A stretch of DNA of 64,000 nt from Schmidtea polychroa (Eukaryota): the NCBI GenBank assembly GCA_044892525.1, contig CM097888.1, positions 37,262,001 through 37,326,000 of the forward strand. The letters are read 5' to 3'. This document shows positions 2,041 to 51,290 of the stretch, one piece after another. The stretch's first letter is position 1. Each line of letters begins with the position of its first letter. Under the pieces are notes generated by a model that had not been told where the DNA came from, did no database searches, and worked only from the letters and a program-made list of their open reading frames with translations. The position numbers and the translations under genes are program-made.

Positions 2041-2113
2041 GTATTTAAGAAGTAAAGTAAATGTGGTTAATAAAGTGTTTTTGAAAGCTAAATCATTGTA
2101 TTTTAAATAGAAT

Positions 2114-4165: not shown

Positions 4166-4308
4166 TTGGTGACGCGCACGCAGGTTGGAACTTACAAGCA
4201 GGTAAGCCCTAGTGTTAGGACTACTCGCTGTAAGATTCACGATACGGGTTCCTGATTGCCGATGGAATGACTTACATATCTTTCACTTTACTACATCCCT
4301 GATCCAAG
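4166..4308 (-). other. Conserved non-coding block downstream of family F (copy 2)
   Basis: Minus strand CTTGGATCAGG...GTAAGTC...GGCAATCAGGAACCCG...GAGTAGTCCTAA...GGGCTTACCTGC...TTCCAACC...CACCAA matches 17058-17191 and 39985-40131. Confidence 0.85.
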
Positions 4309-4560
4309 GAGATGAGGTTCATGCTAAGCTTATCTACCATGAGAGTTGGATCATATCCGAGTTACACCTTCGTAATTGAGCGTACTGATGAACGAGGAAA
4401 ATGATAAGAACCCAAATTTTTTTATTATATCCGTATTACAACACATACTAAATTCACGAAATCAAGAAGTTAAATCCATTCAGTTATCTAAAAAGTTCGG
4501 TTCCATTTATCAATATAGACAGACAAACCACAAGATTGTTATTAGGGTACTATCGTGACT

Positions 4561-5336
4561 TTAGTTGACCTCCATATCTCCTTCGGTCAGCAGGGCATCT
4601 ATATCCACCTGCAGCCAACGATCTTCCTGGTGAGTCGATGCTACGGATGAGATGATTCGAAAGGTATTGAGTCGTGCGATTGATTGAGGATTGGTATTTG
4701 TCTTGGCAATATCCGAGTGGGCAGCGAACAATGAAGTCTCTAGTGCTTCCATCTCCTTTCGTCGTTTTAAAGTTCTCTCAACCCTCGATGGGCCTTCCAC
4801 TTCTTTGGATTCGGACTCGTTGACTTCCCGGAATGGCTTGGAGGAACGGTAGGAAACGATTAACGGAAAGTAGATTCGGAAGTGACGCCATCATTTTTTA
4901 CCCCTTTCAGAATGGGTTCTACGATAGGGGAAAGTTCCGGACCATGCCCTGCACAGCTTGATGACGCTGGGGCATTCAACTCGTCCGCTTGATGATGTTA
5001 GGGGAAAACGTTAAGTCCGTCCTTGATCGGGAATTCCCTGACTCTTCTCAGTATCTCTGATTCGGAGTATACGTGATGCAGGGTATCTGACTGGGCCTTG
5101 ATGGTCAATCGCTGGCAACGGCTTTCCTCCAGGAGACTGTCTCGGGAGTGCACCAGTCGCAAAACGTTCATTTTTTTTTCCTTCATTTGTTGCGGGGAGA
5201 ACCACGTATGTTCTAAAATTTCAATTCGCTTTTTGAAAGCCCCGATGTAGTCTTGTAGTTTTCGGTTGTCCGCGTTCTTGTCGGCACACGAAAAACAAGG
5301 TTTCGGGCTGTGTGGAGGCAAATTAGGCTCGGACAT
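4561..5336 (-). pseudogene. Family F copy 2 (full length; 2 stops and a frameshift)
   Basis: MSEPNLPPHSPKPCFSCADKN...; ORFs 4998-5360 and 4561-4800 match the N- and C-terminal parts of ORF 38970, ending LQVDIDALLTEGD. Confidence 0.9.
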
Positions 5337-8300
5337 GACAGAAAATGTTTTAAAACACAATTTATCAATCGTAAATGAAAACTTTCCTCAATACTACCAG
5401 ACTCATTCGTCGTTCACCTTGATTAGTCAGTCACGAAATCAATATCATCCTAACTCAAATATCAATATTCATATCACGTGCGTACAAAAACGAGGTCTGT
5501 CGTACATATTGAATTCATTACGGGTAGGATTCGATCAAATTATTAATAGGTTCATTTTTTAATGGTTCAATCTTAAATATTTAAATAATATCGAGGGGAG
5601 ATTTTAAGCCAAAATACTTCATGCTAACGATACTAGAATACTGGGTCTAAAATAATTTCTAGCAAACTTTGAGATTCGATGAAATATAGTATTCTAAAAT
5701 TTAAATAAAAATGTTACTAGTAAGAATATTAGCCCTATGTTTAAATTAAGTTTCGGGTTTGTGATACAGAAATTAGTATTATGTATTTCGTCATTATTAT
5801 GGTAGTTTAGGTTTTCATATTTACTTAGTGGTTGAAATGTTTAATTAATTGACGTTTTGTTTATTCTTTCATGGCAATGTTATAAATAATGTCTAAGACT
5901 TGCAAATCCGTTGCCCCACATTTTAGGGTTATCGTGTTTACGTTGACGTTAACAGAATCTGTTTTAGTTCATCCAGTTGGTAGTTTTATGTGTATACGAT
6001 CGTGATTATTTGGAAAATATTTAGTGTATACAATTCAGGAATTGATTTAAATGATTTTCGGAATGTTTACATGCGATTTCTACTTCACGTCACAATATTG
6101 TCTTTAGCGTGATGAGAGAAACTCGATCCATTGAGGTTACGTTTATATGTGATAATATGTCCGGATGTGGTCTGCCGAAAAGTTGATGTTGACTATGCGT
6201 TTAAAAATTTAATGAATTAGCAATTCTAGAGCTTTCAAGTTTTAGTGAATTTTTATTATTGGTACATCTTAACGGAAAAGCCGTGGATAGATTTACGTGA
6301 AAATGAAGACACTGAAGCCTTGGGAGTACCGAAACGACGAAATATCGGATTTATCAGTGATGTTGCCGGAGTTACAAAAATTAATTTAGATGATTCCTGT
6401 GTAAACTTGTTGAAGTTTCCAGTAGTCTTCCTGTCTTATAAGATTTCCGGATCGCTTTTCCATAGTGGCTTTAGAAGTTCCTGAATAGTTTTCGCTCTAA
6501 GTTTTAGAAGTTTGCTATGAGAATTAATGAGAAAATTTTTTTAGTTCTTAAATTTATAAAATTTAACCTGTCGAAAATTTTTTAGAAGTTTAGGGAATAA
6601 GCCAAGTGTCCGCCTTATATAGAATTTTTCGTCCAATCAGGACTTAGTTAGGGTGTATTTTTAATATTTTTCTTATGTCTTGTGCTTTTAACAGTTTTTC
6701 TTAAACTATTTAATCGTTTTAATTTGATTAATTTATCAAGTACTTTATTTTAAATGTTTTTCCTTATTTTTGTTCATTTCTATTGGAGATTCTGTTTGTA
6801 TTTCGTTATTTTTACTTTTATCTTTGTTTTTATTTATGGTTTTATGATAAATTTTTATTTTCTTGTTTGCATTTTTATTGTATTTGTATTTTGTATTTTA
6901 CTTTACAGAATTATTTTCTTCAGCTTGTTCGTTATGGTTGTGTATTTTTGTGATTTAATTGCTACTCTTCATGTTTTTGATGCTCTGATTTTAATTATTT
7001 TTTTATTCTGTTATTTTCTCCTTTTTTATTATTTATTTTTCTCACACTTGACTGATCCACTCCCTTTTTATTATACAGGATTTATTTTTAACTAAGATAT
7101 TTTAATGACCTGTCAAGATGATTTATTATTTTATTATTAACTTTCGTAACTCCCAGCCCAACAATGAGAACCCGATAGCATTTTCAAACCACCAGCAAGT
7201 AGAATGAATCGATAAAGAGAGAAAGTTCACCCGTTGAGACAAATGATCGCGTGTGACATTAGCTAGCTACTTAAGCTGATTTTCATTCTCATTTGAAGTT
7301 GCTACAAATGCAGTTGGCCTTATCGAAATTTTGGCGATATAAATGACATCAGTGCGCTGAGTTAGCAGATTAGAGTTGACTACTATCTAGACAAGCCAGA
7401 TAGTTCACGTTATCGTTCCATGTTAAAATCTATATCACTAATCATCGATGAACCTAAGATTGACGTTGTCTATGAGTATTCGCCTAAAGATTGGCATAAA
7501 TTATTAGAATTACGGCTAGTCGAAGCCACTATACTCATTTTATGTATTGATAAGAATTAGACTCGAAAACCTTAATTGCGTAATCACAGAATTTCGATAA
7601 AAATTAATGGTGCGCCTTCATTAACGTTGGCTTTTGAATTAGATTCCAAAAATAATTTTTGTGTGCGAAAAAATTTAAGTGAATAGAAGATAAAGTTCGA
7701 TTTCATTTTTTTTATAAAACCCATTCGTAGAATATTTGAAAGTAATAGATTGAATAATTATTCCTTGAGTTACGTAATTTTAAAAAACATTAAGAACATT
7801 TAATTTTGTCATTGATTATGGTTTGGAATATGGGAACCCACGAGTAACAGAAACAATGTGCAATTATAATTAGAGTATTTTGGAATAATTAGGTATGATA
7901 AACCGACTTTGTAATTTCACTACTTCGTCACTACAGAATGCCCCAAGTAAGGCCACTACGATTGGCATTTTTATCTTCTATCAAGGATAACAATCTTAGG
8001 TTAAATAAATAAATTAATGTTAATAATTCAACTATCGTTTTTGTTGTTATCTTTAACGGGCCTACGAGCTAACGTCATCGGCACTGATTGGAAAGAGAAT
8101 GCGAGGGATTTCTATGACCTCCATAAGCTTTTTGCCGGAACCTCCCAATCAACCTTGTTATAATAAGCGTGGAACTCGAACTGTCGATACACAATGAACG
8201 GGACTTCTGTAAAATTTTCTTCTCGTAAACCTGTTGTATTGTAGAGACCCATGAGGGTGCACCTATGTATTGCTTGTTTATTTATGCTATAATATCTATT

Positions 8301-8966: not shown

Positions 8967-10102
8967 ATGGTAATAATAAATTGTATGTTGACGTTAGCCA
9001 TGGCCAAAAGGGATAAAAAAGCATATTTTCAGCCTGTGGCAATGCAAGTAGACTACTTAAATGGAATCCGTATATTTACAACGTGTGATAATGACACAAA
9101 ATTCAATCTACATTTTTACAATAAATAAGGGGTCCGCCCACTTAACTCACTAGAAAGAGAATGGGATTTATACGATTTAAAAGCCGGGACAGATTACAAA
9201 CTACACATCGCCGCATCAAGGTTATATCAGAGTGGTTGGCATTCTTACCAAGTATCAAATTGGATACTTGGGACGGCGGATTTCAAAAATCGCATATCGA
9301 AGTAAAGTTTAGTCGACAAATTCGTGGGGAGGAAAAGGTAAAGATTAATATTCTAGACGGACTAACCACGAGGGAACTGGTATGGTTAGATCATAACTCC
9401 CCTTCCAAAGAAATGTATGTAAATCAGTCCGTAGAACATTCGGTTCTAGTTATAAACTATAGTCCGAGAAAACGACAAAACGACAGGTGGTTCGAGGTAT
9501 TTGAAGAGATATTACCTCTTAGACATCCAGTTACAACAAAAATACCACAAAAAGTAATAAGGAAGAACATGGTGATACATCCAGTGAAATGGCAACATTT
9601 CAGACAATTACCACCTATCAAACAAATATCCTGCCAGACGACTCCAAATCTGACAAACTGTTGTGATTCCAATGCCCTCACAAACTTCAAAGCTGGATAC
9701 ATTCTGAAATTACCCATAGGGGTATGGATCACTGTATCGGCAGTATTATTATTAAGAACTACATTGATAGCTATGGGCATTTGGACCAACCTATATATTA
9801 AACATACAACGCAGTGCTGATGTCGCAATTTACGTGCTACTACCCTACTGAAGGAAAAGCTTATATATAAAAGCCTAAAAAAGCAGATAACCGATCAAAG
9901 TCGGAAAGGGCAACGGCACTGGTTCTACGGTCATTGCTCGGGCATACCCAACAAATTTAAATTCTACGAGGCCCAAAAACGTCAAATGATAATAACGAGA
10001 ATTCCGGGCCAGCACAATGCCATCATTAGGCTTACAGTTGTCATGCCCGAATTTGGCCGACATTGTGTAACTTATGTTCGGCTGATAACTGAATGGGATT
10101 AA
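8967..10102 (+). pseudogene. env-position ORF: signal peptide, FN3-like domain, TM helix, Cys cluster, cytoplasmic tail (~378 codons; 2 stops, 1 frameshift)
   Basis: MVIINCMLTLAMA leader. Reading through TAA 9126 gives EWDLYDLKAGTDYKLHIAASR (FN3 L-x-x-G-T-x-Y-like). After a frameshift near 9300: TM IGVWITVSAVLLLRTTLIAMGIW, then QC*C and 93 more open codons ending 5 bp before the TG at 10108. Confidence 0.7.
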
Positions 10103-10107
10103 AATCA

Positions 10108-11800
10108 TGTAAATAACTAAAATAAATATTAAAGATAAGGGAACAAATGGGGGAAATAGGAAACGGATAAGTTAAAATAAAATAACCGCGGAAAGTCTAA
10201 ATAAAAAATAAAATAATAAAAATAAAGAAAATTAACGTACTAATGACAAATCCGAAAATAAAAATAATAATTAATAAAAAATAAGAAAAATAAGAAAATA
10301 CGATAAAAATAGCCAAAAACCCTCAAAAGAAAAGAAAATAAGAATATTTAAAATTATTTATTAATAAAGTTACACAAAAGTAAAGAAAACATAAAAATAA
10401 TAAAAAAGAGAGGAAAAAGAATAAAATCATAATATTACAACTTACTGAATTCTGATTGGGCAGAATTTGGTATATAAGGGAACAGACTGACAAATTTTTC
10501 AGTTTCTAAAATCATCGTTAAGGTAAGGAGAAAATTAATTTTTCCAGTTTCTAAAATAATCCTTAAGGCACCACAGAACGTCAATCTACTAACTATACAT
10601 ACAGGATCCTAGGACTACTAACGAGACTTATATTCGTTATATTCAGTTCACATTCAGTTATAAACCCAGCGATTTCAACAAGTGCGTTCGCTTTTATTTT
10701 TTAAGTTTATTTAAGTTAAGTAATGTGTTTATTATATTGATAAATTTCAATTTAAAGAATTTCACAGTTCGTTGTTCTCATTTCTTTTGATTTTAGGTTT
10801 ATAATATTCATTTAGGTTATACTATGATTTTTATGCTCGTCGAAAGAATGTATATGAATGTTTTAGATCGATTGTTAATCACCTTTAGTCAATTTAGTTA
10901 CATTAATAAAAGGTTCGGTCGTATGGATTTGTTATTAAAATTTGTGTTCAATATACGCTGATTATGTAGATGGGGGGATCAACAGATGGGAACTCGGTCG
11001 ACACAGACAGAAGTATTTGGAGATTGGGAAAAAGCAAAGATTTTAGTCGGAGAAATTTGATGTCATTTTCTCGAGAATTGAATGTGCGATTGGGTTTGGA
11101 ATGGCAAGAGAAGGATCAATATCAGTTACTCGGAAATTATGAACTGAGGGAGTTGAGGGAAAAGTCGATGACCGAATAGTAGACAGGGTAAGGAGGTCGG
11201 AATGAAGGGGAAGTCAGGAAAAAAGGTCGGCATCAATGGGGAAGATAACACGATGAGGAAGAAATCGACGAGTCAGATGGAGATAAACAGGCCAGATTAG
11301 GGAAGATATGAAACGAGGAATAAAGTGCCCAATGGTGGGTTAGAGCTAGGCATCAGTAATTTTTCAGTTTAATTTTTCATATATTCAAAACTTCAATTCG
11401 TTATTTTGTTTACCTGTATTATTTACAGCGTAAATTTTTTTTTATAAATATATTTTTAACATTGCAGATTCATAATGTCTAATTACCGAACCAGCCAGCT
11501 CCGTCGGTGTTGGGTGAACTGTTAGAGCCGTGGGTTCACACTTCATCCTCACTTAGACTTAGTTGTCAGGTTCGGTATGGTCATCTATGACCTATCATTC
11601 TCATAATTTGAATTTTATGTTTTTCAGATTCATGAAGATTAACGTAATGAAGATGTCGGCTCACGAAATTTAGTGTACGGTGATCGACTTGTGCTATATT
11701 CTAGACCGGATTACTGGGTGAATATCCATGGACAGAAGAGAGAATTACCTATCGAGTTGGATTTTAATCTTATCATGATTTGCTTTTCAACTTGAGTTTT
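10108..11800 (+). mobile_element. Probable 3' LTR of the gypsy remnant (right end not determined)
   Basis: TGTAAATAAC start directly after the env-like ORF, A-rich tract, ATTGG 10455, TATATAAG 10471, TCAGTT 10499, donor AAG|GTAAGG 10523, purine-rich tract about 10970-11340. Confidence 0.6.
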
Positions 11801-13108
11801 TAAATAAAAATTTCAATAATTTTCGATTCTCATTAAAAAACTTTTTCCACATGGGATTTATATTACGAGTAATTCGATGAATTTTATGTCCAAAATTTTG
11901 TTGGAAACTTTTGTGTTATCAAATGCAAAACCCGGATGACATATATTAGCAAGTTGTTTGCGATTGGTAAAGGGTCAATATCAAAATCGATCTTTTCATA
12001 GTACTTCCTAGATTACCATTTTTTGATCAATTTGGTCATTTACCCATAATAGGCACTGTTTCCAGTTGTCAGGTGTGCTCGTTTTTCTCCGAGTAAAGGT
12101 TCATACCCGCTGGTGGTCATAGGTACAAGGATTCTTAAATCCTGCCAGTTCATTGAGTGGGTTGACAACTCTTAGTGTTTCTCGTCGGCAGTGGTGATTG
12201 GTCGGCAAGCGTCGGCATGCCAATTCAGTGATATGACGAAACTTGCATAATATCATGAGATTGATATGGATAGCTAAAAGGGGGGGGGTGTTACTAAGAA
12301 TAGATTTACTGAATTACTGCAACATCATTGGATGGATGTGGAATGGGGTTTCTAATATTAGTAACCGGGGGAATCCAAATAAATAAATTTGTTTGAAAAT
12401 TAATTAAATTCATATCAAGAGGATATATTAATTATTAGTAGAAAAATTAAGGGTCGTCCATTAAATGGAATAATAATGGTCATGATCAGAATAATGTAGC
12501 AATAATAACGACAATGACAATAATACTAAGTAATAATCATATTAATAATAACTCCATCGATAGTAATATGGTAGCAATAATAATAGAATTCGCATTAATG
12601 ATAATCGTAATAACAATGGTAATAATATCGCTAATAACAATTATAATGATAACAACGCTAATGGTAATAATAATAGGGAGAACAACAATAATCATAATAA
12701 TAATAAATGAAGATTTATATTTCCATAAGAGTACCTCATATAGACAGCTTGGGGGAGCGGGGTCCATTTATGTAAAATTATGAAATTATATTTAAAATGA
12801 TATAATTTAATGATATATGAATATGATGATTCATTACACCTAAATAATAATTAATGGTTGCCGGTCTTGAGGGGGGTAAAACGATAAGCTACATTTCTAA
12901 AAGTAATAAGTTGGATATATTTGAGGAAAATTCAAATTAGTACTGTCGGGTAACGACTATAGGATCTGAAGGGTGGCGTCTATAACAATTTTCTATTTAT
13001 CATATCACGACAAGTTAATTTAGTATACTAAAGTAACGGTTAATGACTATGATTTTGAGGGGTGTCATTTAGGAATTTTTAGAATTATGCTTTTAAAATC
13101 AAATATGA

Positions 13109-13613
13109 GGACGCGACTTGTGTGTAATGTTATTATTTATTATTAATATTTTTATGTTTTTTAATGTAATATGCTAGATTTTAATGACTTTTCTTATTTT
13201 TATTATTATTTTATTTATTTTCCTATTTTTTATTATTTTTTCCTGTTTTTCCTGTGAATTTATTGCTATTTAGTTATAATATAATTTTTTGTTTTAATTA
13301 GTCCATGCATTTATTTGAACACGGTTTTATTTCTATTTTATTTCCTAATTTCTTGTTTATTTTTTCCTAAATTTTACTATTTTATTTCCTTCTGCTATTC
13401 TGTGTGTTGGGTAATTTTCTTTTTTCCTCTTATTTTTCGTCTTATCAATTTTATTATTTTATTAGTTATTTTTATTTTCTTTATAATCTTATTTCTTTTA
13501 TTGTTATGTAATTTAGTTGTTCTTATATTTTTCCCCGATTTTCGTGAAATTTATTTTATCCTTTTTATCCATCCCTAACCTGATTTCCAACACTCTCGAA
13601 GTTTGGCCCAACA
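13109..13613 (-). mobile_element. Truncated U3 module of a giant LTR-like unit
   Basis: TGTTGGGCC start, A-rich tract, AGTCGCGTCCT shared with 36054-36064; breaks before the CCAAT and TATA boxes. Confidence 0.65.
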
Positions 13614-13799
13614 GGTATATAATTTGAAGGGGTGGTATAGAAAATTTAAGAGTTATAATTTTAAATTCAAATATAAGATAAATATAATTCTGTATTAGTA
13701 TAATTAATGATAGGTATTTCATTGATAATATTTTAGGATTTATATTTTATAAATGAGTTATCTTTTGTATTTTGAAATTATAGTTGATAATCAACATTT

Positions 13800-14349
13800 T
13801 ACTTTAAAATTTCCCATTTAGGTTTTTGGAATGGGTTGCATTTGATGCTTCACGAACTTATGATTTATTGTGTGATTTTATAATTTATGAAAAAATTTTT
13901 TCATATATTAATTTTAATTTAATTTTTATTTTAATGGTGTTTTTCCTAATTTCTTTTTAAAAATTTTTATTTTTATTACTAATTTATTTATTTTTGATAA
14001 CTTTTATTGCTCTATGTGGCTTTTATAATGGTTATCGCCATTCTGATGAAATGTTCTGGGGTTTTCTAGAATTTTTTAATGTTTTACCATCTTTCTAAGC
14101 TATTCGAGTCTGTTTTTTGTAATTCTGTGTTTCTTTCATATTTTTAAGTTAGTTTCTTGCACTACTTCTTGCATTTGTATCCTTTTATTTAATTTCTGTG
14201 TTTATATTTTTGTTACTTTTCCTCTTAATTAATATTGCTTATTTGGTGTATTTCTTATATTTAACTGAACGTTTTTTGCGTGCTATGTACCAACGCACTT
14301 TAGTCACAAATTAGAGTTTTTGGGTCTAGAAATCAGTTCTAGCCCAACA
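13800..14349 (-). mobile_element. Truncated U3-like module
   Basis: TGTTGGGCT start at 14349 followed by a long A-rich tract; no CCAAT or TATA seen; left end approximate. Confidence 0.45.
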
Positions 14350-16034: not shown

Positions 16035-17324
16035 AGTCGAATGAATGCCGAATGTCAGTTATTTTTACCAGTATGATGGAGCTGTTTTTCTGAAGAGTTT
16101 TCCTTAGTTTTATAGAAAATGTCTGAACCAAATCTGCCAGTAACCGGCCTGAGACCGTAGTTCTCGTGCACGGATAAAAATTCGTTATTGAGGAAATCAG
16201 ACGATTATATCAGAACGTTGAAGAGAAAAATCGACACGTTGAAAGGCACCTGGTTCAATCCAGCGGCCATGAAAGAAGCCCAGACGAAAACTCTCAGGCT
16301 CGAGCACTGCCGTGACAGTTTGCTCGAGGAAAGCCGAAGTCAACGGCTTACGATTAAAGCTTAGTCGGCGGCTCTACACCGCATCTATTCCGACGCAGAG
16401 CTCAAGGCCAGAGTAGTTGAGTACCCCTCTGCATCATCGAACCGATCACGTGGGCCCATCCCACTCTTCACCTTGCCACTCTCATGGACCCACCGTAACA
16501 TCATCTGATCGTCCAGACATCTTAATGTCGGAAATTTACAAGTCCGCGACATCTAATATACCTCCAGAACTTACTTGGGTTCCCCGAGGAGACGTCCAAG
16601 CTGATCCCCCTACAGCAAAGAAGAAGCGGCTGACTCGCGCCGAGAAAACTAAAAAACGAAACGAAGAGCTCGCGGCAACTTCGGTTCAGTCGGTCATTCC
16701 GAAAGACGCGAATTCTGCAGTAAGAATCGTGCCAGCTACAATTTCTCAGACAGCTTCTGACCTGGCATTGGAAACCGACATCGCGGCTATGCTGTTGGAA
16801 GGAGATTGGTAACGGGCGGAGATCGTCAGCTAGCTTTATGTATCGGTACATTCGGCACTTCATGATAGTGGTAGACTCATTGAGCACAATAAAACTGTAT
16901 CTGTGTATAAAGTAGTCGTTTGCTGATTTTTGTAATTTCTACGCATGCTCGGCGAATAAATGTATTGCGAACGATGGGTTGTTGATTTATTAAATTTGCC
17001 TTATCTTATTGTTAAGACTCTGATGCGCTTGAGTAAACGGGAATGAGAAAAACCTCACTTGGACCAGACGGTTTGGGGAAAGCGTAAGTCCTTCTACGGC
17101 AGTCAGGAACCCGTACCGCGAATACTGGGGGAGTAGTCCTAACGCACGGGCTCATCTGCCCGCAGGTTCCGACCTCGGTGCACATCACCAAAATGGTTTA
17201 GTGTCATGTGTGCATCGGAGGGAATATCATTACCATCATCTTGGGTAACTAGGAAAATCGAGCTAGTCAAAATTCCACCAGTAGTCGTCCCATTCGTCAA
17301 CTATCCAACCCCAGGTACCCAACA
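16035..17324 (+). mobile_element. 5'-truncated giant LTR-like unit (3' end at 17324)
   Basis: Contains F copy 3, AATAAA near 16955 and conserved block 17058-17191; ends ACCCAACA at a distance from the block similar to the two TSD-bounded units. Left junction at the G11 run 16024-16034. Confidence 0.7.
16119..16812 (+). pseudogene. Family F copy 3 (stops and a frameshift)
   Basis: MSEPNLPVTGLRP*FSCTDKN...RLEHCRDSLLEESRSQRLTIKA*S...; C-terminus KKKRLTRAEKTKKR...RIVPA...ETDIAAMLLEGDW; acceptor TTTTATAG 3 nt before the ATG. Confidence 0.9.
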
Positions 17325-25095: not shown

Positions 25096-25101
25096 ATTGA
25101 C

Positions 25102-27989: not shown

Positions 27990-28780
27990 TCGGTGTTGAT
28001 GCCTTGACAAAAGAAAATATTGACCTTTTTATTCCCTATCTTCTTTTGACCAACGTTTTCCTTTTCTATTCGATTTAATTCTTTTCCACTCTTTACGTAT
28101 CTCCTGATTCTATATTTTCTTTTTCCCTCAACTTCCTAATTCGTCTTTTTCCTTTTCCTACCCTCGTTTTCTTCTAATTCCTAGCTGAAGCAGAATGCCG
28201 GATTGCTCTGATTTTCCCATTCCTTATATACTCTTCGAAATCGTGATGACAAATGGTTATTGCCGAGCAAATCTATCTCATGACATTTAACTAAACATTT
28301 CTGCTTGGGCTGTCACCCAGAATGGTCCAACGAACAAAGATAACTAATGGCTTGCCCAGCACGCACTATCTTTTTCTTGGTCTTTTCCCATCAATCATTG
28401 TGACACGATAATGGGCCCAAATCTTTCTTCTGTTTACTTTTCTCTTTGTTTACCCAACTCGTCATTTCTTTCGGTTAGCTAATTAGCACTCTTCCTAGCA
28501 CTTCCTGAAACTGTCGTTATCACCATGTTATTCCCCGCTATCTGTTCTCCCTAGGATCAAAGTTTCAGACTTTAATTCGAATTTATGAATCTTTTATCGA
28601 ATTTTCTCAATTCACCTTTTTTGTGCTTTTTCCATGTACTGATGCACCTTCTCGAGCCTTTCTACCCATTTAATCTTCGTTTTGTCAATTCTCTCCTTGA
28701 CCAGCCTTGCACCTCTTTCGTTCTTTTAATTAAAAATATAATTATATTATTTTAATTTTAATTATTTTATAACCCCAACA
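27990..28780 (-). mobile_element. LTR-like fragment of the TGTTGGGG type
   Basis: Starts TGTTGGGGTT at 28780; strongly purine-rich on minus; TATATAAGG at 28230-28222; left end approximate. Confidence 0.55.
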
Positions 28781-33900: not shown

Positions 33901-36900
33901 TCGATAAAGATGTCAACTAAATCTCTCTCGAATTCGAAGAATAGTTCTACAAAAGCCATTAATGAGGATAAAAGTTATGAAAATAGAAGTCCATCTGAAT
34001 TAGAAAGTGGAGATCAGTTAAATTTGTTAACAGTGCCCCAACTTGTTCGTCGAGATGCGTCAGCTTCTTTTGGAGATTTAAGTTCTTTAGACGAATATAA
34101 TATCAATGAAATCAAGTCAAAAATAATGCAAAACAATGAGTTCGCATCAGAAATCACCATTAAAAACCATACTAGGAGTGCTGACCTCAGTGGGAAAAAT
34201 GTTTCCAACACAAACAATTTTGATTTGCTGCCCAGATCAGAATCTTCGTGTAACTAAATCAGAAGAAATTGCTTTTCTATTTTCATGAATATTTTTTTGC
34301 CTTTCTTGATTTTGTACATTAAAATTGTATTAAGTTTATGGTATTTTTAAGTACAATAAAATTTACCAGCTATTAAAACAAAATTTTCAGAAATGAAGCA
34401 GTGATTTGCTTTACCCTTACAAGTTGGAATTTTTCTCCTAGCAAAGGTGCCGTAGAAATACAAACAATAAATCAATATCATATCAAAAATAAGAAAATAT
34501 GTTACGAAGCCTTTTACTAACGGGTGAGTTTAGGTTTTCTATTAGTCTCAAATAGTAGATTATAAACTTCATTTTTAATTACTAAATCTTTAGAAGTTAT
34601 TGTTTGAGTAAGAAGTGTCATGAGTAACGGATGTATTAGGTCATTTTGAAAGTAATGTAGTTTTGTAAAGGGTCTATTTTAATTCTTCAGAAATATGGTT
34701 AATGATAAAGTATACGAATTACTTTAAGATTTAAAACCTAACATTTTCTTTGGAAATGAAGTCACACAAAGGACATATTGTAAAGAAAATTAAAATAAAG
34801 AAACATCGAGATAAGCCTCACAGACTTATAAAATCTTTTGAATAAAAATTTAAATAATGAACATTTGGAAACAAAAAAGACAGATAAACGGTGCACCGCG
34901 AACCCATTTGAATACGTGTCCATTAAAGTGCACGAGATGTCACTTACTTTAGACGAGTGTTCTCCGACGGAATACAATACCAATGTTAAGCATTCAACAG
35001 TATTGCGCGGTTGATAAAAGCTGTGTCCTTAGTTGCGCTGGAAACAGCACGAGAGGGTAACTCCCTCCATTGAATTTATCATGAACAAATATTTGTCGAC
35101 GTCAAGTGCCTAAAAAACAAAAAACACCATTTTCCTGTATTTTATTTACTCTAAATGTAATACTATGACATCTGTCTGTACTTTGTAATCTGTACTCTCA
35201 GTACACACTCATTCGTACACACTTGAAATGATTGACCATAATATTAATAAATATTTTTCAACTCTAACCTAGTCCCCACTCCTTCACAAATTCCTAGCTA
35301 CGCCACTGAGCAAATGATGTTTTATTTGACATAGTGGCCTGTGGCCCATGGCTATGTTCTATATTACGCAAATGATACGCATGGTTTCAGTTTCAGTAAT
35401 TATGGTTAGTAAATACAACAGTTTTTAATTCCATCATTAAAAAAACTCAAAACTTTATTTAGCTTATTTTTGAATATTGATACCGATGTTGATCTAACTA
35501 CTTGTTGATATTCGTTCAATTTATTCTGATGGAGTTCAGATGCTTGAACTTTAAACTGATCGTAGTGTTGCGGTAAAGTTTAGAGTGGAAAAAACTGGAT
35601 CAAATAGAGAAGCGAACCTCGAAAAATAAATGAAATAAAATAAAAAAATAAAATTACCTCAAATCCCAGTAGTAAATAAGGAGAAACAATAAAATACCCG
35701 TAAAAAAAATAAGAATAGGTAACAAATAAATAAAACCCTAAGATTACGAGATAAATCAAGGAGAAACAATTTAAAAACACACCATGAATAAAATAGAAAT
35801 AGTATAAGCAAAAAAGGTGAGAAAATAAACGAGAAATTAAAGCAATAAATAAAAATAAAACTACTTTTAGGACTAATTAAAACAAAAAATTATATTGTTA
35901 TAAAATAGCTATAAACCAGCAGGAAAAATAGGAGAAAAATAGTAAAAATAAGAAAATAAATAAAATAATAATAAGAAATAAGTTAGTTATTAAAAAATCT
36001 AATATAGTATAATAAAAACATAGAAATACCAATAAATAACGAAATTACAAGCTAGTCGCGTCCTGATTGGACGGAAAATAGTATATAAGCAATGGAAAAT
36101 ATCTGTAGAGTACCATTTAACCGCTATACTCTACAGCAACCAATTTTCGGATATTACCTTAGAAGACACTCTACCAACGTTACGAACTTGCGAAAAACTT
36201 TATTACAGCGAACTAGTTCTAGAATTCAAATTCAAACTCTAGGAAGAAATCCATAGTAAATTTAGCGACAAACTTATTCAGGAGAAATTTTAGTTTTCAA
36301 CCAATTTGATCCAGTTTTGAAACCCAAGGTATGTTGAGTCGTTTATGATTCAATTTAGTAAATTTTTGAATGGTTTAATTTTGTATGATTCGATTTTTGT
36401 AAATATAATGATAACTTTCAGAAAATAAATTTATTTAAAAGAAAATAGCTTTCTTCATGGTGCCGGCGACTGTACCATTTGGTAACTTCAAGTATGATGC
36501 GAATGAGAGGAAATAGCCACGAGGGATTTTCATGATATGCATCCAGAAGATGTTGAAAGGACATTGGGTTCTCAGAGAATACGATACTGGGAGAAGAGAG
36601 GCCCGCCAATGCCTGATTACGCGAGTGATTTAATGGAGAGAGACATCATACTTGGAGCCCAAATGATAGGGTCGCCGGGTAAATTATATTTATTCATTAT
36701 TTCGTAAACATATTTTGATCATTATGAATTATATGCAAATTATCATTTTATTGAATGCGAAGGAGTTGATTGGTCCCTCATGACGGTGCAAGAATGGCGG
36801 CAGCAATGAATGCCTTCTTGGGTGTGTCATGAGGGGTGATGAGACTCTGTAGATTGAGAAGTCGAATTTCCTTCACCGAACGCGATTGTTCGTAGAATAC

Positions 36901-39900
36901 TCCATTGTTATATTTGGTCGCATCAAAATTTCCAATAGCTGCGGAGACGATTTAGAATTCGAAAAAGAGACAATTCGTATTTGAGACTCATGTTTACGTT
37001 AGTGCTGATTAGGGAAAATCTACATAGATAGAGGAATACTTTCTTGATCATCAGCTTGTCGATCAGAGTGATTTGGAATAGGACCTTGTCGATCACAACG
37101 CACGAATAAATCCAATGAATTTCTGCAATATACTGCCTTTTGAAACGTCATCCGATTTAGATCGCCAGAGCATTAGCGCCAAAATCCATTTACGATGTAC
37201 TTTTAGTCTACAATATTGACTTTCGAGTGGCTGATAAGCACCGTCTTCTGAAAATTAAAGTAAATAACCAATGAGAAATTATCAGAAATCTTACGATAGA
37301 GATGAGAGAAATTACTGACAGAATTATCGGTTAAGCTTGTATTGACTGGAGGAATCACTGTGAGGGTTATCTGCTAATTGACAAATGAATTGCAGTCAGA
37401 TTATAACCAACATAATTTGACGATCGACGAAACCAGATAGAGTTGATAACCGGTTAACTTCCAAAATGATTTGTTTAAGCGGCGCGGGGGTAGACGTTGT
37501 CTTGAGTTGGCCGTTTGATAAGCGAATTAGATTATGATTCCCAGCTCATTTCACCATTTACCGAATTGCCACACGCGATCTAAGGCAGATGCTCATACAT
37601 CTACACCTAACCGCGAAATATAACATTATCTATAATCTAAAAAAAAAATCAATAAATATATATTATAGGAACACACAAACTTACCTGTGTGTAGAAATTT
37701 AATGCCGCGAAATTTATCAATATTATAAATGCTGACTAACAGTAATATTTAAGAACTTGAATAATGATCTCATAATTATATAAAATCAAAATTCAAGTCC
37801 TAAAAATTACTTCAATGCAAAAACTTACCTTTAAACGATTTTTGGAAAATTGAATAAATGAAATTAAGTTAACATTGTCATATAATTGGTGACTCACCTC
37901 AGGTGGTGTGCACACCAACTTATATTATAGACAATGTTAACTTTCGCGGTTAGGTGTAGTATCAATTCACATCGACCGTGTGGTACACGCATACCTTCGC
38001 ACACTCTCCTTACAGTAGGATACACCAAACACCACTGAGATGCATTTCCTATAATATAACAAAAAAATCAATAATCTTACATTATAGAAACATACATACT
38101 TACTTTGATTTCACGTTGATGTTCTCATTTATAGCTCAACGTATCTCAGTGGTGTTTGGTGTAGCAAAATACTTTAAATAGTAGAGTTTTCGACGACGTC
38201 ATAATTACATAATAGTCTACGATTCACGATTTCATGAGATAGTAGGATGGTGTGTATAAGTAGTAGGACAGATCGCTTTATTAACGACGTAATACGACAT
38301 CGGACTGTATAGCCTATTAGGGAGAACGACAACACATGCAGACACAAGCCTACACTAATCTAACCGAACATACCAACTCGCTTAAGGCAAATTGAATATA
38401 ACACAAGCACACGAGTGGGCGTCGTCATGACGACGAGTGCAGCGCGTTTTATAAAAATTCATAATTTAATTTCTAAAGCATTATTATATATTATATATAA
38501 TATATAATATAATATGATTCGAATATTTTTCAACCTGCATTGCAATTAACATCGTACAAATAATTATAAATTACACTAAATTTCGACCACCAGACATGCA
38601 CAACTCAACAAAACCACAATACTAGGCATTAGCGCTTTAATTGATTTTCGGAACATAACAACGTTAGCAGATAATCAAAAAGAGTAATAATGGAGAGGAC
38701 TGTCTAACCTGAAAGTAAATGTTGATTTTTAGGTCGAGTAAATTGAATTTAATATTTCCCCGTTTTCTTTTCTAAATTATTATTAGTAGATAATTTGATT
38801 TGAACGTTTAGTAACGGAATGAATGTGAAGTGCTGAGATATAGGAAAGAGTGGTTTGAGGGTTGCATAAAGTGGTATGATGAATGAGATCGTTAAGCCTG
38901 GGGGTTAAATCGTAAATGATACGCAAATGAGTGTTGCGACTGCTTCTGAATATATTAATAAATTTCTAGATGACTACACCATCCAACAAGGCTAAAGAAC
39001 TCGGCCCGTGTTTTTCTTGTGCCGACAAGAACGCGGATATCGCTCAACTTCACATATATATCGGGGCTCTAAAGAAGCGCATAAACCTTCATGAAGGCAC
39101 GTGGTTCTCGCCGCCACAAATGAAGGAGGAAAGGACTAAGATCCTCAGATTAGAGCACTGTAGAAACAGCCTGCTGGAAGAGAGCCGCTGTCAAAGGCTC
39201 ACAATAAAGGCACAGTCAGAAGCCCTCCATAAGGTCTATACGGAGGCAGAACTAGCCAAGCGAGTGCGCGAATTTCCCGTCGTGGATGGAACAAACGTGT
39301 TCCCTCTCCACCATCAGTCGTCTACATCGTCTACCACAAGTTGTCAAGGGCACGGCTCCCATCGGCCGCCCACCCCAGCCCCAGTACTGTCGGGATATTT
39401 ACCCATGAAAGGTGGCCTGTCTGACCCAATTCTGGCCCCAATTCTCGTGGCACCTTCTGTCACCACGGCGGTAGGAGAAAATCCGCCATCCCGCAAACGC
39501 AAGCATCCAACTAGGGCCGAGAAGAATAGAAAACGCCGGAATGCAATGAAGGCACGCGAAACGTCATTATCAGCGGCACACTTGAAAATTAAGGAAATAT
39601 CAACAACTCACTCAATCCCCTCAAAAGAAGTTTTCCGCATTGTTCCAGCCAGCGGTATCAAATTCATATCCGACTGCCGATTACCTGTTGACATCGACGA
39701 GATGATCGCCGAAGGGGACAACTTCGTCTAGACCGGATTCCTATTGAGCTCGATGTTTGCTTCGAGCCGTAAATGAACTTGAAGACTTTGTCGAATGTCG
39801 TATCCTACTGGTTCATATGCTGTTGATCTAATAATTGGGATGATGTATTGTTTTATTTTTGTTTCAGTGTCAATACATTTTTCTGTTTGGTTATTATTTT

Positions 39901-42718
39901 GTAAAGTCTTCAAATATTTGGTTTTGCGAATTAGAGTAAATGAATTAGGGCGGAAGAATGAAGGAATTAGGCCAACGGTCGTCCTTTGGACCAGGATCGA
40001 ACCGAGATTTATGTATGAATGAGGGTAAGTCCTTCTCAGGCACCATGGAACCCGAACCGAACAGGGGTTAGGAGTAGTCCTAAGGCAGGGCTCACCTGCT
40101 AACCTCTTCCGACCCGTGTGGGCAGCACCAACGTGGAACATCGTCACGGGCTCACGCGTGGGAATATTTGTATGATCATTAGGGATATGCAAGGGGAGTG
40201 TCTAAGCGGAACGATAAGGCTTCGTATGTCTGGAAATCGTACGTAACTAATTTTCTTCCCCACCATACACCAACAGTAGTTAAATCAACTTAAGTGTCAG
40301 TAATATTATATTTGAATATATAAAAAATTGAACCCGGATACCTGGGCATTAATAAACAAATTGCTTTATTTTCAAATGAAAAGTTAAAAAGAATCAGTTG
40401 GAGCATTGAACAAGTATATGATTTTATAAGGACATAAATATCTTCAGAGTAGTTCCTGTGTCGATAATTGTTCAGCATTTTTCCTAACACTTTCTACGTT
40501 GTTAATATTGATGAATTTTTTTTCAACTTGGTAATTAATAAAATAATTTTATATACACTTCTCTTATCTAAGAAAGCTTATAATTTAAGTTTATGTTCTT
40601 TATCAAGGTCGGTTCTAGATGTAGGCTACGTAATCTCAAACCCACATCCGCAACAGCAATGAGAATAACAACATATATGGCATGGGATTCAGTAAATAAT
40701 GAAAATTTAAATCTAGATCTAAAAAATGTTAGAGATAAAAGGTATTTTCCGTTCTCTGTTCGAAGAACTGACGAGACTGTTTTTCCAGTATTTACATTGT
40801 TGAGGTTACGCAAATTGGTGTAATTTTCACAAAAAATGATTAAAAATGATTAAAAAATTTTAAATATTATGTAAAAATTTAAAAATTAATATAATTCGCG
40901 AGTTGGGGGTTGGGGGTAGATTTAGAAAAGCTGGTCGGAAATACGTGAAAAAATATAGGTGGCCCTAAATCCCCTTTTTACATCTCATATTGTCGTTTTA
41001 TAATGTACTATCTCATAATTATAAAAAAGACTGCTGCCTATATAGTAAACGACCGAAGGATAATTGACTCTATTTAATTGTTCTACAGAATGATTTAGAT
41101 ATAAGTTATTATAATTAATAATACCAGTTATGAAGCTGAAACTAATGACAGACAGACAAATACAGAGTCCCTACTATCAAATATCAAACTCATCAATGGC
41201 CCTATATATAGGATTGACCAGAAAATATACAACTGTGGAAGGCATAAGTGCGGTTTAACAATAAAATTGCCCATGTTGCAATATTTAAAATAATAATGGT
41301 TTTCAGAGTGGTTCCCAAACGCCAAGGAATTTAGTTACAACTGATGTTTGTACATAAAATTGTTCTTGATAAATTATATGACTTTTACAATTACGATGTT
41401 AAATATATATAATTAGAGGCTATAACATTTCACTGTTCACTCATAATCCCAAAATTTATTTCATTACAGGTCGTAAAAAATATTTTTTAAGACAATTACT
41501 AATTATTTAATATCAACAAAAAAATTTCAAACATTCATCATTCATAAAAACTTTAAACATTTGATTTTTTAATTTAAAAACTAGAATAAAACTTTTACCC
41601 TATATAAATAATAATATAATTTAAAAATAATTTCAAAATAAAAATTTTGTTTTTTAATCCTTTGAACCCTAAACTCCGATAAAATGACCTGATTTAGTGA
41701 CGCATATACCATAATGGCGGGTTACTGGCCTCAATGTATATCCAGATATGTATATGTTAATACTTTTGACTCATTAACACCGTCATCGCGAGATGATAGG
41801 AAGGGCAGAACTTGTTTTAGCATGAACTCCGTGCGAAAGTGTTCCTAGGTTGAGATTGTTGTGTGCAGAGGTGCTAGTAGTTTTATATACATTTTGAAAA
41901 ATTTGCGTGTGAATCTGAAAACTGTTATGATGTGTATCATTCCAAAGTTGAATTCTGGAGATAAATTAATATTTTATTATAAGAACTTTTTTTTCACTTG
42001 AAAAGGGCAGTGCCGAAAATTTGTGAATATCAAAAACATCGACTTATTTATTGATTCATAGTTTTCAAATTTTTAAAAAATTTTTTTTTTTATAAATAGA
42101 TGTTTTTACCTATTATAATTAATTAAAAACTCATTATTCTTATATTAATGTAATTATTATTTTTATAATCAATAACTTTTTTTACTACAGGAAGTTGTGT
42201 AAAATTATTATAAACTAGAAAAAGGTTTCCTGGTTGGAAATTGATTTTTGGTTAAAATTGCAGTTTTAGTCAAATATTATTTTTTGGTCAAAAATTACTT
42301 ATGAGCTCAGGCTTAGCGTACTTGTATAATGAACGCCTCAGGGTTCAAAAGATTGAATTTTCTCCTCACACAACATATATAAAAATTTAATAAAAGCAGT
42401 TTTTAAAATATTATTACTGTCATTAATAAATAATTTTTTTTACGAATTAATTCTCACTGACTTCCAGCTACGACAGGCAGCTTGCGAATTATATATCTGT
42501 TGAAATATGCCAGGTAACCTATAGTAAGAGTAAACAATGATTATGATATTTAGATTATTTGTTCAATGATCTTTTATCCAATGAGCTTTTGTTTCAATAT
42601 TGCTCTTATTCGTGTTACCAGTAAGCCATCAATTATTTATCAACGCTATTCACAATTTCATCTTCCATCAATTCGTTTCATTCAAGGAATAAATATTACA
42701 TCGGAAATCAAGCAAACC
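33901..42718 (+). CDS. Multi-exon host gene of unknown function (exons about 33901-34249, 40608-40741, 42468-42513, 42554-42718; ends undetermined)
   Basis: The last three exons have canonical GT-AG sites and join in one open frame (VGSRCRLRNLK...VRDK|SYDRQLANYISVEICQ|IICSMIFY...EIKQT) with a 40-bp intron. Linkage of the 115-aa ORF at 33910 is inferred and needs an extra small exon. Confidence 0.5.
37604..37956. mobile_element. Tc1/mariner-type MITE (353 bp) inside the solo unit
   Basis: TIR CACCTAACCGCGAAA / TTTCGCGGTTAGGTG extending imperfectly to ~35 bp; TA on both sides. Confidence 0.85.
38023..38161. mobile_element. Tc1/mariner-type MITE (139 bp) inside the solo unit
   Basis: Perfect inverted repeat CACCAAACACCACTGAGAT / ATCTCAGTGGTGTTTGGTG; TA on both sides. 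Confidence 0.85.
38970..39731 (+). CDS. Family F copy 4, intact 253-aa protein of unknown function (coiled coil, Pro/Ser linker, basic NLS-like tract, acidic C-terminal motif)
   Basis: Uninterrupted ORF; three homologues in the window; acceptor TTTCTAG abuts the ATG; RKRKHPTRAEKNRKRR; ends LPVDIDEMIAEGDNFV. Confidence 0.9.
   Translation: MTTPSNKAKELGPCFSCADKNADIAQLHIYIGALKKRINLHEGTWFSPPQMKEERTKILRLEHCRNSLLEESRCQRLTIKAQSEALHKVYTEAELAKRVREFPVVDGTNVFPLHHQSSTSSTTSCQGHGSHRPPTPAPVLSGYLPMKGGLSDPILAPILVAPSVTTAVGENPPSRKRKHPTRAEKNRKRRNAMKARETSLSAAHLKIKEISTTHSIPSKEVFRIVPASGIKFISDCRLPVDIDEMIAEGDNFV
39985..40131 (+). other. Conserved non-coding block downstream of family F (copy 4)
   Basis: TTTGGACCAGG...GTAAGTCCTTCT...GGAACCCG...GGAGTAGTCCTAA...GGGCTCACCTGC...TTCCGACC...CACCAA. 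Confidence 0.85.
41658..42352 (+). mobile_element. Internally deleted piggyBac-like element
   Basis: TIRs TCCTTTGAACCCT / AGGGTTCAAAAGA; TTAA on the left, TTGA on the right; C-terminal Cys-rich remnant FACESENCYDVYHSK. Confidence 0.7.
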
Positions 42719-51161: not shown

Positions 51162-51290
51162 AATCGCTTATACAATTAAATTGAAAAATGGACTATTATA
51201 AGAAAATTTATTAAATACTAAGTGACAACCAATAAAACTAAATAGCGTTCAAAAATTGTATGAAATTAAATGCAAAGTCATGTATAAGTG

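What the first reader, a model, noticed from the sequence alone, without database searches (positions are those of the whole stretch)
35566..40275. Giant solo-LTR-like unit that is a self-contained protein-coding cassette
Seen: a 4.7-kb unit with TGTTG...CAACA ends and an exact GTAG TSD, containing a promoter (A-tract, ATTGG, TATATAAG), an intact 253-aa ORF and a conserved 3' block, but no gag/pol and no internal LTR pair. A second TSD-bounded unit (4060-7163) has the same layout. Known: TG...CA ends with a 4-bp TSD fit Ty3/gypsy integrase; multi-kb LTRs occur in planarian giant retroelements (Burro) and plant Ogre; LTR-encoded genes are rare, MMTV sag being the classic case. Inference: these are solo LTRs of giant gypsy elements whose LTR carries its own gene, so each solo-LTR event leaves a promoter-plus-gene cassette. 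Alternative: a non-autonomous linear element mobilised by a gypsy- or Ginger-type integrase.
Basis: partly seen in the sequence, partly recalled or inferred. Interest (0 to 1): 0.92.

Follow-up and report, generated by a model that had tools for sequence, protein, structure and literature searches.

The report
Integrase-type repeat carrying its own gene
A 4.7-kb repeat bounded by retrovirus-style ends and a 4-base target duplication carries its own promoter, an intact 253-residue gene of an undescribed protein family and a conserved 3' signal; it is most likely a solo LTR, but this window cannot prove that.

Summary
Unit A (35566-40275) and unit B (4060-7163, minus strand) have TGTTG...CAACA ends, exact 4-bp duplications (GTAG; ATGA) and the same layout. 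The layout is an A-rich 5' region, a CCAAT-plus-TATA promoter, a variable stretch, a splice acceptor just before the ATG, the ORF, a poly(A) signal, and a conserved ~110-nt block.

The window holds at least ten 5' ends and four 3' ends of such units, from lineages so old that silent sites are saturated. Even so, the ORF (third-position identity 0.29-0.44, second-position 0.74-0.80), the promoter and the 3' block are conserved, so all three are under selection.

The protein has no Pfam, PDB or fold match. Its only relatives are about a dozen chimeric gene models in UniParc.

The LTR reading is not shown. None of the 14 termini adjoins a primer-binding site, a polypurine tract or gag/pol, and no same-family pair exists here. 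No other copy of the genome could be reached.

A near-threshold mir-753 hit and about 70% A+T suggest a planarian, where giant Burro elements with multi-kb LTRs are known.

Best reading: solo LTRs with an LTR-borne regulatory gene (about 0.55). Main rival: a free-standing cassette moved in trans by an integrase (about 0.3).

The parts
35562..35565 (.). Left target-site duplication GTAG of unit A
   Evidence: Read directly; identical to 40276-40279.
35566..40275 (+). Unit A, complete: TGTTG...CAACA, 4710 bp
   Evidence: The edges coincide with the edges of the architecture shared with units B and D.
35566..36062 (+). A-rich 5' region (proposed start of U3)
   Evidence: 56% A; 16 AATAAA on the sense strand and none on the antisense strand, against about 3 per kb in the window. 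Aligns with 13105-13483 on the minus strand at 72%.
36063..36089 (+). Core promoter: CTGATTGG (CCAAT box) followed by TATATAAG
   Evidence: The same two boxes, 12-22 nt apart, are invariant in A, B, G, H and C' while the surrounding sequence is unalignable.
36330..38969 (+). Putative intron between a non-coding leader and the ORF (inferred)
   Evidence: GTATGT donor at 36330. A pyrimidine tract plus AG ends 0-4 nt before the ATG in A, C and D but not in B. This stretch varies in length among units and is not conserved. No transcript data.
37601..37959 (.). Nested 359-bp insert with 40-nt inverted ends; carries a mir-753-like hairpin at 37746-37806 (minus strand)
   Evidence: Inverted repeat at 90%. 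Rfam mir-753 at 61.8 bits, gathering score 62, E 1e-11.
38970..39731 (+). Intact ORF of 253 aa: helical hairpin, disordered linker, Arg/Lys-rich helix, acidic tail
   Evidence: AlphaFold2 gives helices 20-41, 48-89, 92-101 and 182-205. Purifying selection. Family alignment.
39830..39835 (+). AATAAT at the position where units B and D have AATAAA (proposed poly(A) signal, end of R)
   Evidence: 99 nt after the stop in A, 150 nt in B, 76 and 143 nt in D.
40025..40137 (+). Conserved non-coding 3' block, starting with GTAAGT (proposed U5 signal or splice donor)
   Evidence: 74% mean column identity among A, B and D where silent sites are saturated. No coding signature in any frame.
40276..40279 (.). 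Right target-site duplication GTAG of unit A
4060..7163 (-). Unit B, complete, 3104 bp; ATGA at 4056-4059 and 7164-7167. Promoter 6613-6640, 3' block 4162-4275
4576..5336 (-). ORF copy in unit B, broken: 1 in-frame stop and at least 1 frameshift
   Evidence: tblastn gives 58% and 41% identity in two frames; stop count.
2130..3995 (-). Unit C, 3'-truncated. Its ORF copy at 2162-2632 is broken: 1 stop, and the C-terminal ~96 codons are missing
1524..2130 (+). Unit C', 5' part only (terminus, A-rich region, promoter at 1768-1804)
1..1125 (-). Unit H: 5' terminus at 1125, promoter at 814-851; runs off the window
10075..10479 (+). Unit G: 5' terminus, A-rich region and promoter (10452-10479). Possibly the 5' part of the unit that ends as D
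   Evidence: Flanks are CTTA at G against CTAA after D, a 3-of-4 match.
16119..17324 (+). Unit D, 3' part. ORF copy at 16119-16806 is broken (2 stops, at least 1 frameshift). 3' block at 17084-17191; CAACA ends at 17324
12944..14349 (-). Unit F, probably complete but short (1406 bp): GTAC on both sides, no ORF and no 3' block; contains fragment E
   Evidence: By eye from the sequences printed, its 3' end matches that of D at 9 of the first 11 bases; one CA-plus-TSD hit is expected by chance, so the end is probable, not certain..
13105..13613 (-). Fragment E: 5' terminus and A-rich region, cut off at the promoter
   Evidence: Flanked by a 49-nt direct repeat at 76%.
28223..28780 (-). Fragment J: 5' terminus, purine-rich region, TATA-like box
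9860..9953 (-). Possible unit end I: terminus plus a degenerate CCAAT/TATA pair, without an A-rich region
   Evidence: Weakest assignment.

Best explanation
Units A and B, and the other ends and fragments in the window, are insertions made by a retroviral-type (DDE) integrase. They are best read as solo LTRs of a diversified group of LTR retroelements with multi-kb LTRs, probably in a planarian genome.

Proposed layout in this reading:
- U3 is the 5' terminus, the A-rich region and the CCAAT/TATA promoter.
- R runs from the start site, about 30 nt after the TATA box, through a non-coding leader, an intron and the 253-codon ORF to the poly(A) signal about 100 nt after the stop.
- U5 is the last ~430 nt, holding the conserved block and the CAACA end.

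A transcript that starts and ends inside one LTR would therefore be a complete mRNA for the ORF. Every LTR, paired or solo, would be an expressible gene.

The protein has a dimer-type helical hairpin, a disordered linker, an arginine-rich helix and an acidic tail. I take it to be a nuclear nucleic-acid-binding regulator of the element. It could act on the element's own intron-containing transcripts or on its promoter. The conserved 3' block, with its GTAAGT, is the likeliest cis target or splice/poly(A) control site.

Shown: the discrete insertions with duplications, the shared architecture, selection on the ORF, promoter and 3' block, and the lack of known homologues. Inferred: LTR identity, the U3/R/U5 borders, the intron, and the protein's role.
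For: - Termini and exact 4-bp duplications for A and B, and probably F.
- An extended shared 5' terminus at ten sites and a shared 3' terminus at four.
- Inverted identity of the two ends is only 6-7 bp, as in LTRs. There are no long inverted repeats and no terminal direct repeats.
- The order promoter, transcribed gene, AATAAA, conserved terminal block is the order U3-R-U5.
- The ORF shows the signature of a translated, selected gene across lineages whose silent sites are saturated. pN is 0.22-0.30 against pS 0.77-0.95 in the N-terminal segments, and pN 0.38-0.45 in the shorter C-terminal segments. Nucleotide identity by codon position is 0.60-0.70, 0.74-0.80 and 0.29-0.44. Selection over that depth is expected for part of an autonomous, replicating lineage rather than a passive passenger.
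- About 70% A+T and a mir-753 hairpin point to a planarian, given my own recollection (no paper found) that mir-753 is a planarian-specific family. Giant Burro gypsy elements have an internal region up to 25 kb and exceed 30 kb with LTRs, so each LTR is multi-kb, and they occur in thousands of copies (PMC6431247; PMC11410931).
- Long LTRs recombine readily, so a large excess of solo copies is plausible (general knowledge).
Against: - Zero of 14 termini adjoins a primer-binding site, a polypurine tract, gag or pol. The unrelated small gypsy element in the same window shows both signals plainly, so they are detectable here.
- No CCHC knuckle occurs anywhere in the window.
- The only other pol piece is an orphan 560-bp RT fragment.
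- No two units belong to one family, so no LTR pair exists here.
- R would be 2-3.7 kb and would contain an intron, which is unprecedented to my knowledge.
- The start of U3 carries 3-16 sense-strand AATAAA hexamers (none in J). A genomic transcript would have to read through them in the 3' LTR.
- Ten 5' ends against four 3' ends is unexplained.
- A Burro LTR could not be fetched for comparison.
Confidence: 0.55

Rival explanations
1. The units are free-standing, non-autonomous mobile cassettes with neither LTRs nor long inverted repeats. They would be moved as DNA by an integrase supplied in trans, either a Ginger-type transposase or the integrase of an LTR element. The integrase would recognise only the short TGTTGGG...CCCAACA ends. 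The gene with its own promoter, intron and poly(A) signal would be the element's cargo. The A-rich, AATAAA-dense region would shield the promoter from read-through coming from the flank.
For: - All complete units are bounded directly by host sequence with duplications, and no terminus touches retroelement internal sequence.
- An intron is kept, which is simple for a DNA-level element.
- There is no terminal direct repeat that could serve as R if the unit were copied through RNA on its own.
- A short derivative (F, 1406 bp) keeps both ends but lacks the ORF and the 3' block, as deletion derivatives of DNA transposons do.
- TGTNR ends and 4-bp duplications are also those of Ginger1. This is my recollection of Bao, Kapitonov and Jurka 2010 and was not checked here.
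Against: - Inverted identity of the ends is only 6-7 bp. There are no subterminal repeats shared by the two ends, whereas Ginger-type elements have inverted repeats of tens to hundreds of bp.
- A passenger moved in trans has no obvious reason to keep an ORF under purifying selection across saturated divergence.
- No integrase partner other than that of the small gypsy element is in the window. That element uses different ends, AGTTAT...ATAACT.
Confidence: 0.3
2. The 5' module (terminus, A-rich region and promoter, 0.3-0.7 kb) is the real repeat unit of a more ordinary element. The long units A and B are composites, or one-ended products, that happen to include the ORF and the 3' block.
For: Ten 5' ends against four 3' ends. 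Six copies consist of the 5' module alone or nearly so: C', E, G, H, J and I.
Against: - A and B have exact duplications around the whole long unit.
- The 3' ends of A, B, D and F share a terminus and, for the first three, a conserved block at a similar distance of 102-144 nt from the end.
- No 5' module has its own matching duplication at short range.
- Truncation by later insertions and deletions in this repeat-dense region can explain the fragments.
Confidence: 0.08
3. This is not a mobile element. It is a dispersed host gene family with a shared promoter, and the termini and duplications are chance.
For: Termini plus a 4-bp duplication alone occur by chance about 2.5 times per window.
Against: - The same extended terminal motifs occur at ten 5' and four 3' ends exactly where the homology stops.
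- The units lie in both orientations, nested and truncated, within 40 kb.
- Three of four ORF copies are broken.
- Relatives in the public database occur only as pieces fused to unrelated host genes.
Confidence: 0.04

Closest known systems
Solo LTRs of Ty3/gypsy elements with very long LTRs: planarian Burro/GYPSM1 and plant Ogre (LTRs 1.9-6.5 kb; PMC6431247)
   Same: TG...CA ends with a short inverted match, a 4-bp duplication, multi-kb length, high copy number, and promoter-then-poly(A) order. The probable planarian host is the host of Burro.
   Different: No paired copies, primer-binding site, purine tract or gag/pol are seen next to any terminus here. A complete spliced gene lies inside the unit. 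R would be kilobases long. No sequence comparison with a Burro LTR could be made.
LTR-embedded accessory genes of retroviruses: MMTV sag in U3, and foamy-virus tas/bet reaching into U3 (my own knowledge)
   Same: A protein-coding ORF lies inside the repeat, so it is present twice per provirus and survives in a solo LTR.
   Different: There is no sequence or fold similarity: no Pfam family (any Sag or foamy-virus models in Pfam-A included) and no PDB match. Here the ORF would sit in R, behind the LTR's own TATA box and an intron. In MMTV the ORF sits in U3.
Ginger1 DNA transposons (cut-and-paste elements with a gypsy-like integrase; my own knowledge)
   Same: TGTNR...YNACA ends and 4-bp duplications.
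   Different: Ginger elements have inverted repeats of tens to hundreds of bp and encode the integrase. These units have 6-7 bp of inverted identity and encode no enzyme.
Arginine-rich retroviral regulators (Rev/Rex type) and coiled-coil plus basic-region nucleic-acid binders (functional analogy only)
   Same: A small protein with an oligomerising helical part, an Arg/Lys-rich helix and an acidic tail, encoded by an element whose transcripts appear to need splice control.
   Different: There is no homology. The only trace is a sub-threshold Pfam REV hit in one relative (19.1 bits against a cut-off of 22), most likely due to composition.

Membership tests
LTR of an LTR retrotransposon (Ty3/gypsy-type), present as solo LTR | TG...CA termini with a short imperfect inverted repeat | tested here: met
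   TGTTG...CAACA in A, B and D, and TGTTG...CGACA at the proposed F end. The extended motif is shared at ten 5' ends.
LTR of an LTR retrotransposon (Ty3/gypsy-type), present as solo LTR | Target-site duplication of 4-6 bp around the unit | tested here: met
   GTAG (A), ATGA (B), and probably GTAC (F).
LTR of an LTR retrotransposon (Ty3/gypsy-type), present as solo LTR | U3-R-U5 organisation: promoter upstream of a poly(A) signal inside the unit | tested here: inconclusive
   A CCAAT/TATA promoter lies about 0.5 kb from the 5' end, and AATAAA lies 76-150 nt after the ORF stop. The order fits, but there are no transcript data and R would be 2-3.7 kb.
LTR of an LTR retrotransposon (Ty3/gypsy-type), present as solo LTR | Elsewhere, two same-family copies in direct orientation enclose gag/pol, with a primer-binding site and a polypurine tract | tested here: not met
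   Within the window, 0 of 14 termini meet this and there is no same-family pair. Genome-wide this is not testable with these tools, so the failure applies to this window only.
Burro (planarian giant gypsy element) LTR | Host is a dugesiid planarian | tested here: inconclusive
   mir-753 hit at 61.8 bits, 0.2 below the gathering score. About 30% G+C against more than 70% A/T reported for Schmidtea. That mir-753 is planarian-specific is my recollection; no paper was found.
Burro (planarian giant gypsy element) LTR | Sequence similarity to a Burro LTR or adjacency to the Burro polyprotein | not testable with these tools
   No Burro sequence is reachable, and the genome paper is not held. No Burro-type domains were found next to any unit.
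Ginger1-type DNA transposon, non-autonomous derivative | TGTNR termini and 4-bp duplication | tested here: met
Ginger1-type DNA transposon, non-autonomous derivative | Terminal inverted repeats of tens to hundreds of bp | tested here: not met
   Only 6-7 bp of inverted identity. No inverted repeat links the two ends.
MMTV Sag-like superantigen | Sequence homology to the Sag family | tested here: not met
   Pfam scan of the ORF found 0 families. No PDB sequence or fold match.
Rfam mir-753 (nested hairpin, not the unit itself) | Score at or above the curated gathering score | tested here: inconclusive
   61.8 bits against a gathering score of 62.0; E 1e-11; full-length match 1-62.

The most novel reading that the evidence does not exclude
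The units are not LTRs at all. They would be a new kind of mobile gene cassette without LTRs, long inverted repeats or any enzyme gene, inserted as DNA by a retroviral-type integrase acting in trans. Each would carry a complete Pol II gene for a previously unknown arginine-rich regulator, which the cassette needs and has kept under selection through deep diversification.
Probability: 0.22. Interest if true: 0.85.

Novelty: new variant of a known kind. Interest (0 to 1): 0.6.

Why it matters
If the LTR reading holds, these would be LTRs that each contain a full, spliced, selected gene with its own promoter. Every recombination to a solo LTR would then leave a working gene instead of a dead scar. 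The element would also express a factor independently of its genomic RNA.

That would add a new accessory-gene family to the giant retroelements of flatworms. It would also offer a handle on how such elements control splicing and export of very long transcripts.

The copies are dense and carry strong conserved promoters and a conserved splice donor near their 3' end. They could therefore drive or splice into neighbouring host genes. Public gene models that fuse this ORF to about ten unrelated host proteins show that it already confuses annotation.

If the units turn out to be free-standing, they would be a new way for a gene to ride on integrase activity.

Tried and rejected
- Protein searches with the ORF. 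The word-indexed search of 5.8 billion proteins found nothing. The exhaustive search found 11 weak hits, all UniParc-only chimeric models. A profile search added one. None has a contig on record, so no genomic context was available.
- Scans of metagenome and viral contigs with protein patterns and with a 20-base pattern from the 3' block were all empty. A first profile was too divergent to use.
- Pfam, PDB sequences, fold search and a profile comparison with a gypsy Gag gave no true match. Furin hits came from the host part of one chimeric relative.
- The 3' block as a structured RNA. The alignment fold gives a hairpin whose lower stem changes sequence but keeps pairing. The single folds are inconsistent and not more stable than shuffles, with z from -0.5 to -1.9. 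With three sequences I leave it as a lead.
- The 3' block as coding was rejected. It matches no Rfam family and no tRNA.
- Primer-binding site after D, purine tracts before all 5' ends, CCHC knuckles, and retroelement domains in the ORFs downstream of D: none found.
- Terminal direct repeats, long inverted repeats and paralogous empty sites: none found.
- B and C as an LTR pair with a 64-bp remnant between them was rejected. B has its own duplication, the two are deeply divergent, and the spacer has no primer-binding site or purine tract.
- The organism could not be named. The window's own proteins are not in the collection. The Burro genome paper is not held and no paper was found for mir-753.
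Full report
**1. What is there**

Unit A runs from TGTTG at 35566 to CAACA at 40275, with GTAG on both sides. Unit B (4060-7163, minus strand) has the same ends and ATGA on both sides.

Ends plus a 4-bp duplication are weak evidence by themselves. Six such pairs occur in the window, against a mean of 2.5 and a maximum of 9 in shuffles. The case rests on architecture. In both units the ends coincide with the limits of the same ordered set of parts.

**2. Anatomy, in element orientation**

- (a) A shared 5' terminus, TGTT then G or C, followed by a G-rich triplet.
- (b) An A-rich stretch of 0.2-0.55 kb. It is 51-59% A in eight units and 39% A but purine-rich in J. It carries 3-16 AATAAA hexamers on the sense strand in those eight (J has none) and none on the other strand in eight of the nine units (one in G). 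The window averages about 3 per kb.
- (c) CTGATTGG followed 12-22 nt later by TATATAAG. Both boxes are invariant in five units, although the flanking sequence cannot be aligned. This is a textbook CCAAT-plus-TATA Pol II promoter.
- (d) A stretch that differs in length and is not conserved. The distance from the 5' end to the ATG is 1.4-3.4 kb. In A this stretch begins with a GTATGT donor. In A, C and D it ends with a pyrimidine tract and AG 0-4 nt before the ATG. I read it as an intron. In A it holds nested insertions.
- (e) The ORF.
- (f) AATAAA 76-150 nt after the stop in B and D, and AATAAT at the same place in A.
- (g) A block of about 110 nt that starts with GTAAGT. It has 74% mean column identity among A, B and D. 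It is not coding in any frame.
- (h) A further 100-145 nt, then CCAACA.

**3. Copies in the window**

tblastn finds four ORF copies:
- A is intact.
- B has 1 stop and at least 1 frameshift.
- C has 1 stop and is 3'-truncated.
- D has 2 stops and at least 1 frameshift (counts).

Ten 5' ends carry the terminal motif: A, B, C, C', E, F, G, H, J and, weakly, I.

Four 3' ends exist: A, B, D and F.
- F (12944-14349) has GTAC on both sides. Its 3' end is close to that of D. It has no ORF.
- G and D may be one unit split by nested insertions. Their flanks are CTTA and CTAA, a match of about p 0.05.

**4. Selection**

Between copies, nucleotide identity is 0.74-0.80 at second codon positions and 0.29-0.44 at third positions. 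pN is 0.22-0.30 and pS is 0.77-0.95 in the N-terminal segments.

Silent sites are therefore saturated, and the copies come from lineages that split long ago. The protein was kept throughout. On that background the promoter boxes, the termini and the 3' block must also be constrained.

**5. The protein**

- It matches no Pfam family.
- The exhaustive search gave 11 hits with E from 5e-8 to 4e-4. A profile search gave one more.
- All hits are UniParc-only models. In them the domain is fused to pieces of unrelated proteins: an SNF transporter, glycine dehydrogenase, subtilase, CRAL-TRIO, L21, actin, an ABC protein, a tyrosine phosphatase and a hAT transposase.
- Two relatives start with the same MSEP-type N-terminus as copies B and D. 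The ORF is therefore a complete unit.
- Conserved features are a GTW-x-SP turn, ESR-x-QR, an IP-x-x-H motif and an Arg-rich patch.
- AlphaFold2 models a confident helical hairpin (residues 20-101) and a basic helix (182-205). The rest is disordered, with mean pLDDT 60.
- There is no significant fold or PDB match.

**6. LTR or not**

For:
- The ends, the duplication size and the very short inverted match are those of LTRs.
- The order of parts fits U3-R-U5.
- Long-term selection on an ORF is what one expects of part of an autonomous lineage.

Against:
- No terminus adjoins a primer-binding site, a purine tract or gag/pol.
- The window has no CCHC knuckle. Its only pol sequences are an orphan RT fragment and a separate small gypsy element.
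- That small element (24974-27542) shows a clear primer-binding site and purine tract. Such signals would therefore have been seen.
- If a fraction f of LTR copies still belonged to full or partly deleted elements, the chance of 0 of 14 junctions is about (1 - f/2)^14. So f is probably below about 0.2-0.3. That is compatible with a solo-dominated family of long LTRs, and equally with a free-standing element.
- The kilobase-long, intron-bearing R and the AATAAA-dense start of U3 are awkward for the LTR model.

**7. Host**

Inside the proposed intron of A lies a 359-bp insert with 40-nt inverted ends. It carries a full-length match to Rfam mir-753 at 61.8 bits, against a gathering score of 62. 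To my knowledge this is a planarian miRNA family.

Together with about 30% G+C, this suggests a planarian. Schmidtea is reported as more than 70% A/T with giant Burro elements. Burro has an internal region up to 25 kb and exceeds 30 kb with its LTRs, and it occurs in thousands of copies.

**8. Verdict**

I put 0.55 on solo LTRs with an LTR-borne regulatory gene. I put 0.3 on a free-standing cassette moved in trans. The rest goes to the minor rivals.

- While reading copy D by eye, I registered in my working notes where one of its stops lies. I have not repeated this or used it.
- Broken copies were compared only as single-frame pieces. Only counts and outer bounds are given.
- Consensus lines printed by the alignment tools were not used.

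Noticed in passing
window 37601-37959 (hairpin 37746-37806, minus strand); related palindrome 38021-38163: A 359-bp insert with 40-nt inverted ends (90%) carries a full-length mir-753-like hairpin at 61.8 bits, 0.2 below Rfam's gathering score. A second, shorter palindromic copy lies 420 bp downstream. A miRNA family may be riding on a MITE-like repeat.
   Followed up: partly
window 24974-27542: A small gypsy-type element with 112-nt LTRs (98% alike), AGTTAT...ATAACT ends, a TGG-type primer-binding site and a purine tract. It has RT and integrase ORFs but no RNase H, so it is internally deleted. Its closest relative (84%) is on an ENA contig, and another relative on a 9.3-kb ENA contig has gag-pol-integrase units arranged in tandem.
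   Followed up: partly
window 24562-24819 (minus strand): The first exon of a host short-chain dehydrogenase gene (Pfam adh_short, E 2e-12). Fragment J (5' end at 28780, same orientation) and the small gypsy element lie just upstream of it.
   Followed up: partly
whole window: There are ten 5' ends of the unit family but only four 3' ends. Several copies consist of the terminus, the A-rich region and the promoter alone. Whether this reflects later truncation or a property of the element is open.
   Followed up: partly
window 8311-8874 and 9161-9820 (plus strand): An orphan gypsy RT fragment (42% identity to its best database hit) is followed by a 219-aa ORF with a hydrophobic C-terminal stretch and no Pfam match. 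They lie between unit B and the possible unit end at 9953. Any relation to the units is unknown.
   Followed up: partly
window 13061-13109 and 13629-13677: A 49-nt direct repeat (76%) brackets fragment E inside unit F, and a third partial copy lies at about 12963-12990. This could be a local duplication or part of the unit's promoter-proximal region.
   Followed up: no
window 20443-20688, 43862-44428 (minus strand), 47734-48234: Remains of other transposons: a hAT dimerisation region, a pogo-type DDE_1 transposase ORF and a hAT-associated DUF4371 ORF.
   Followed up: partly
window 35475-35502 and 40275-40302: The host sequences on the two sides of unit A are 79% complementary over 28 nt. The unit may have landed in a palindromic site or a small inverted-repeat element.
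   Followed up: no
window 51286-51451 and 52204-52369: A 166-nt direct repeat (92%), with an N gap (51456-51630) right after the first copy. It was not examined, and the gap was left untouched.
   Followed up: no
proteins P0121-P0132 (UniParc only): Public gene models fuse the unit's ORF domain to about ten unrelated host proteins. Some relatives carry a PPPY motif after the basic patch. These are probably annotation chimeras caused by the repeat.
   Followed up: partly
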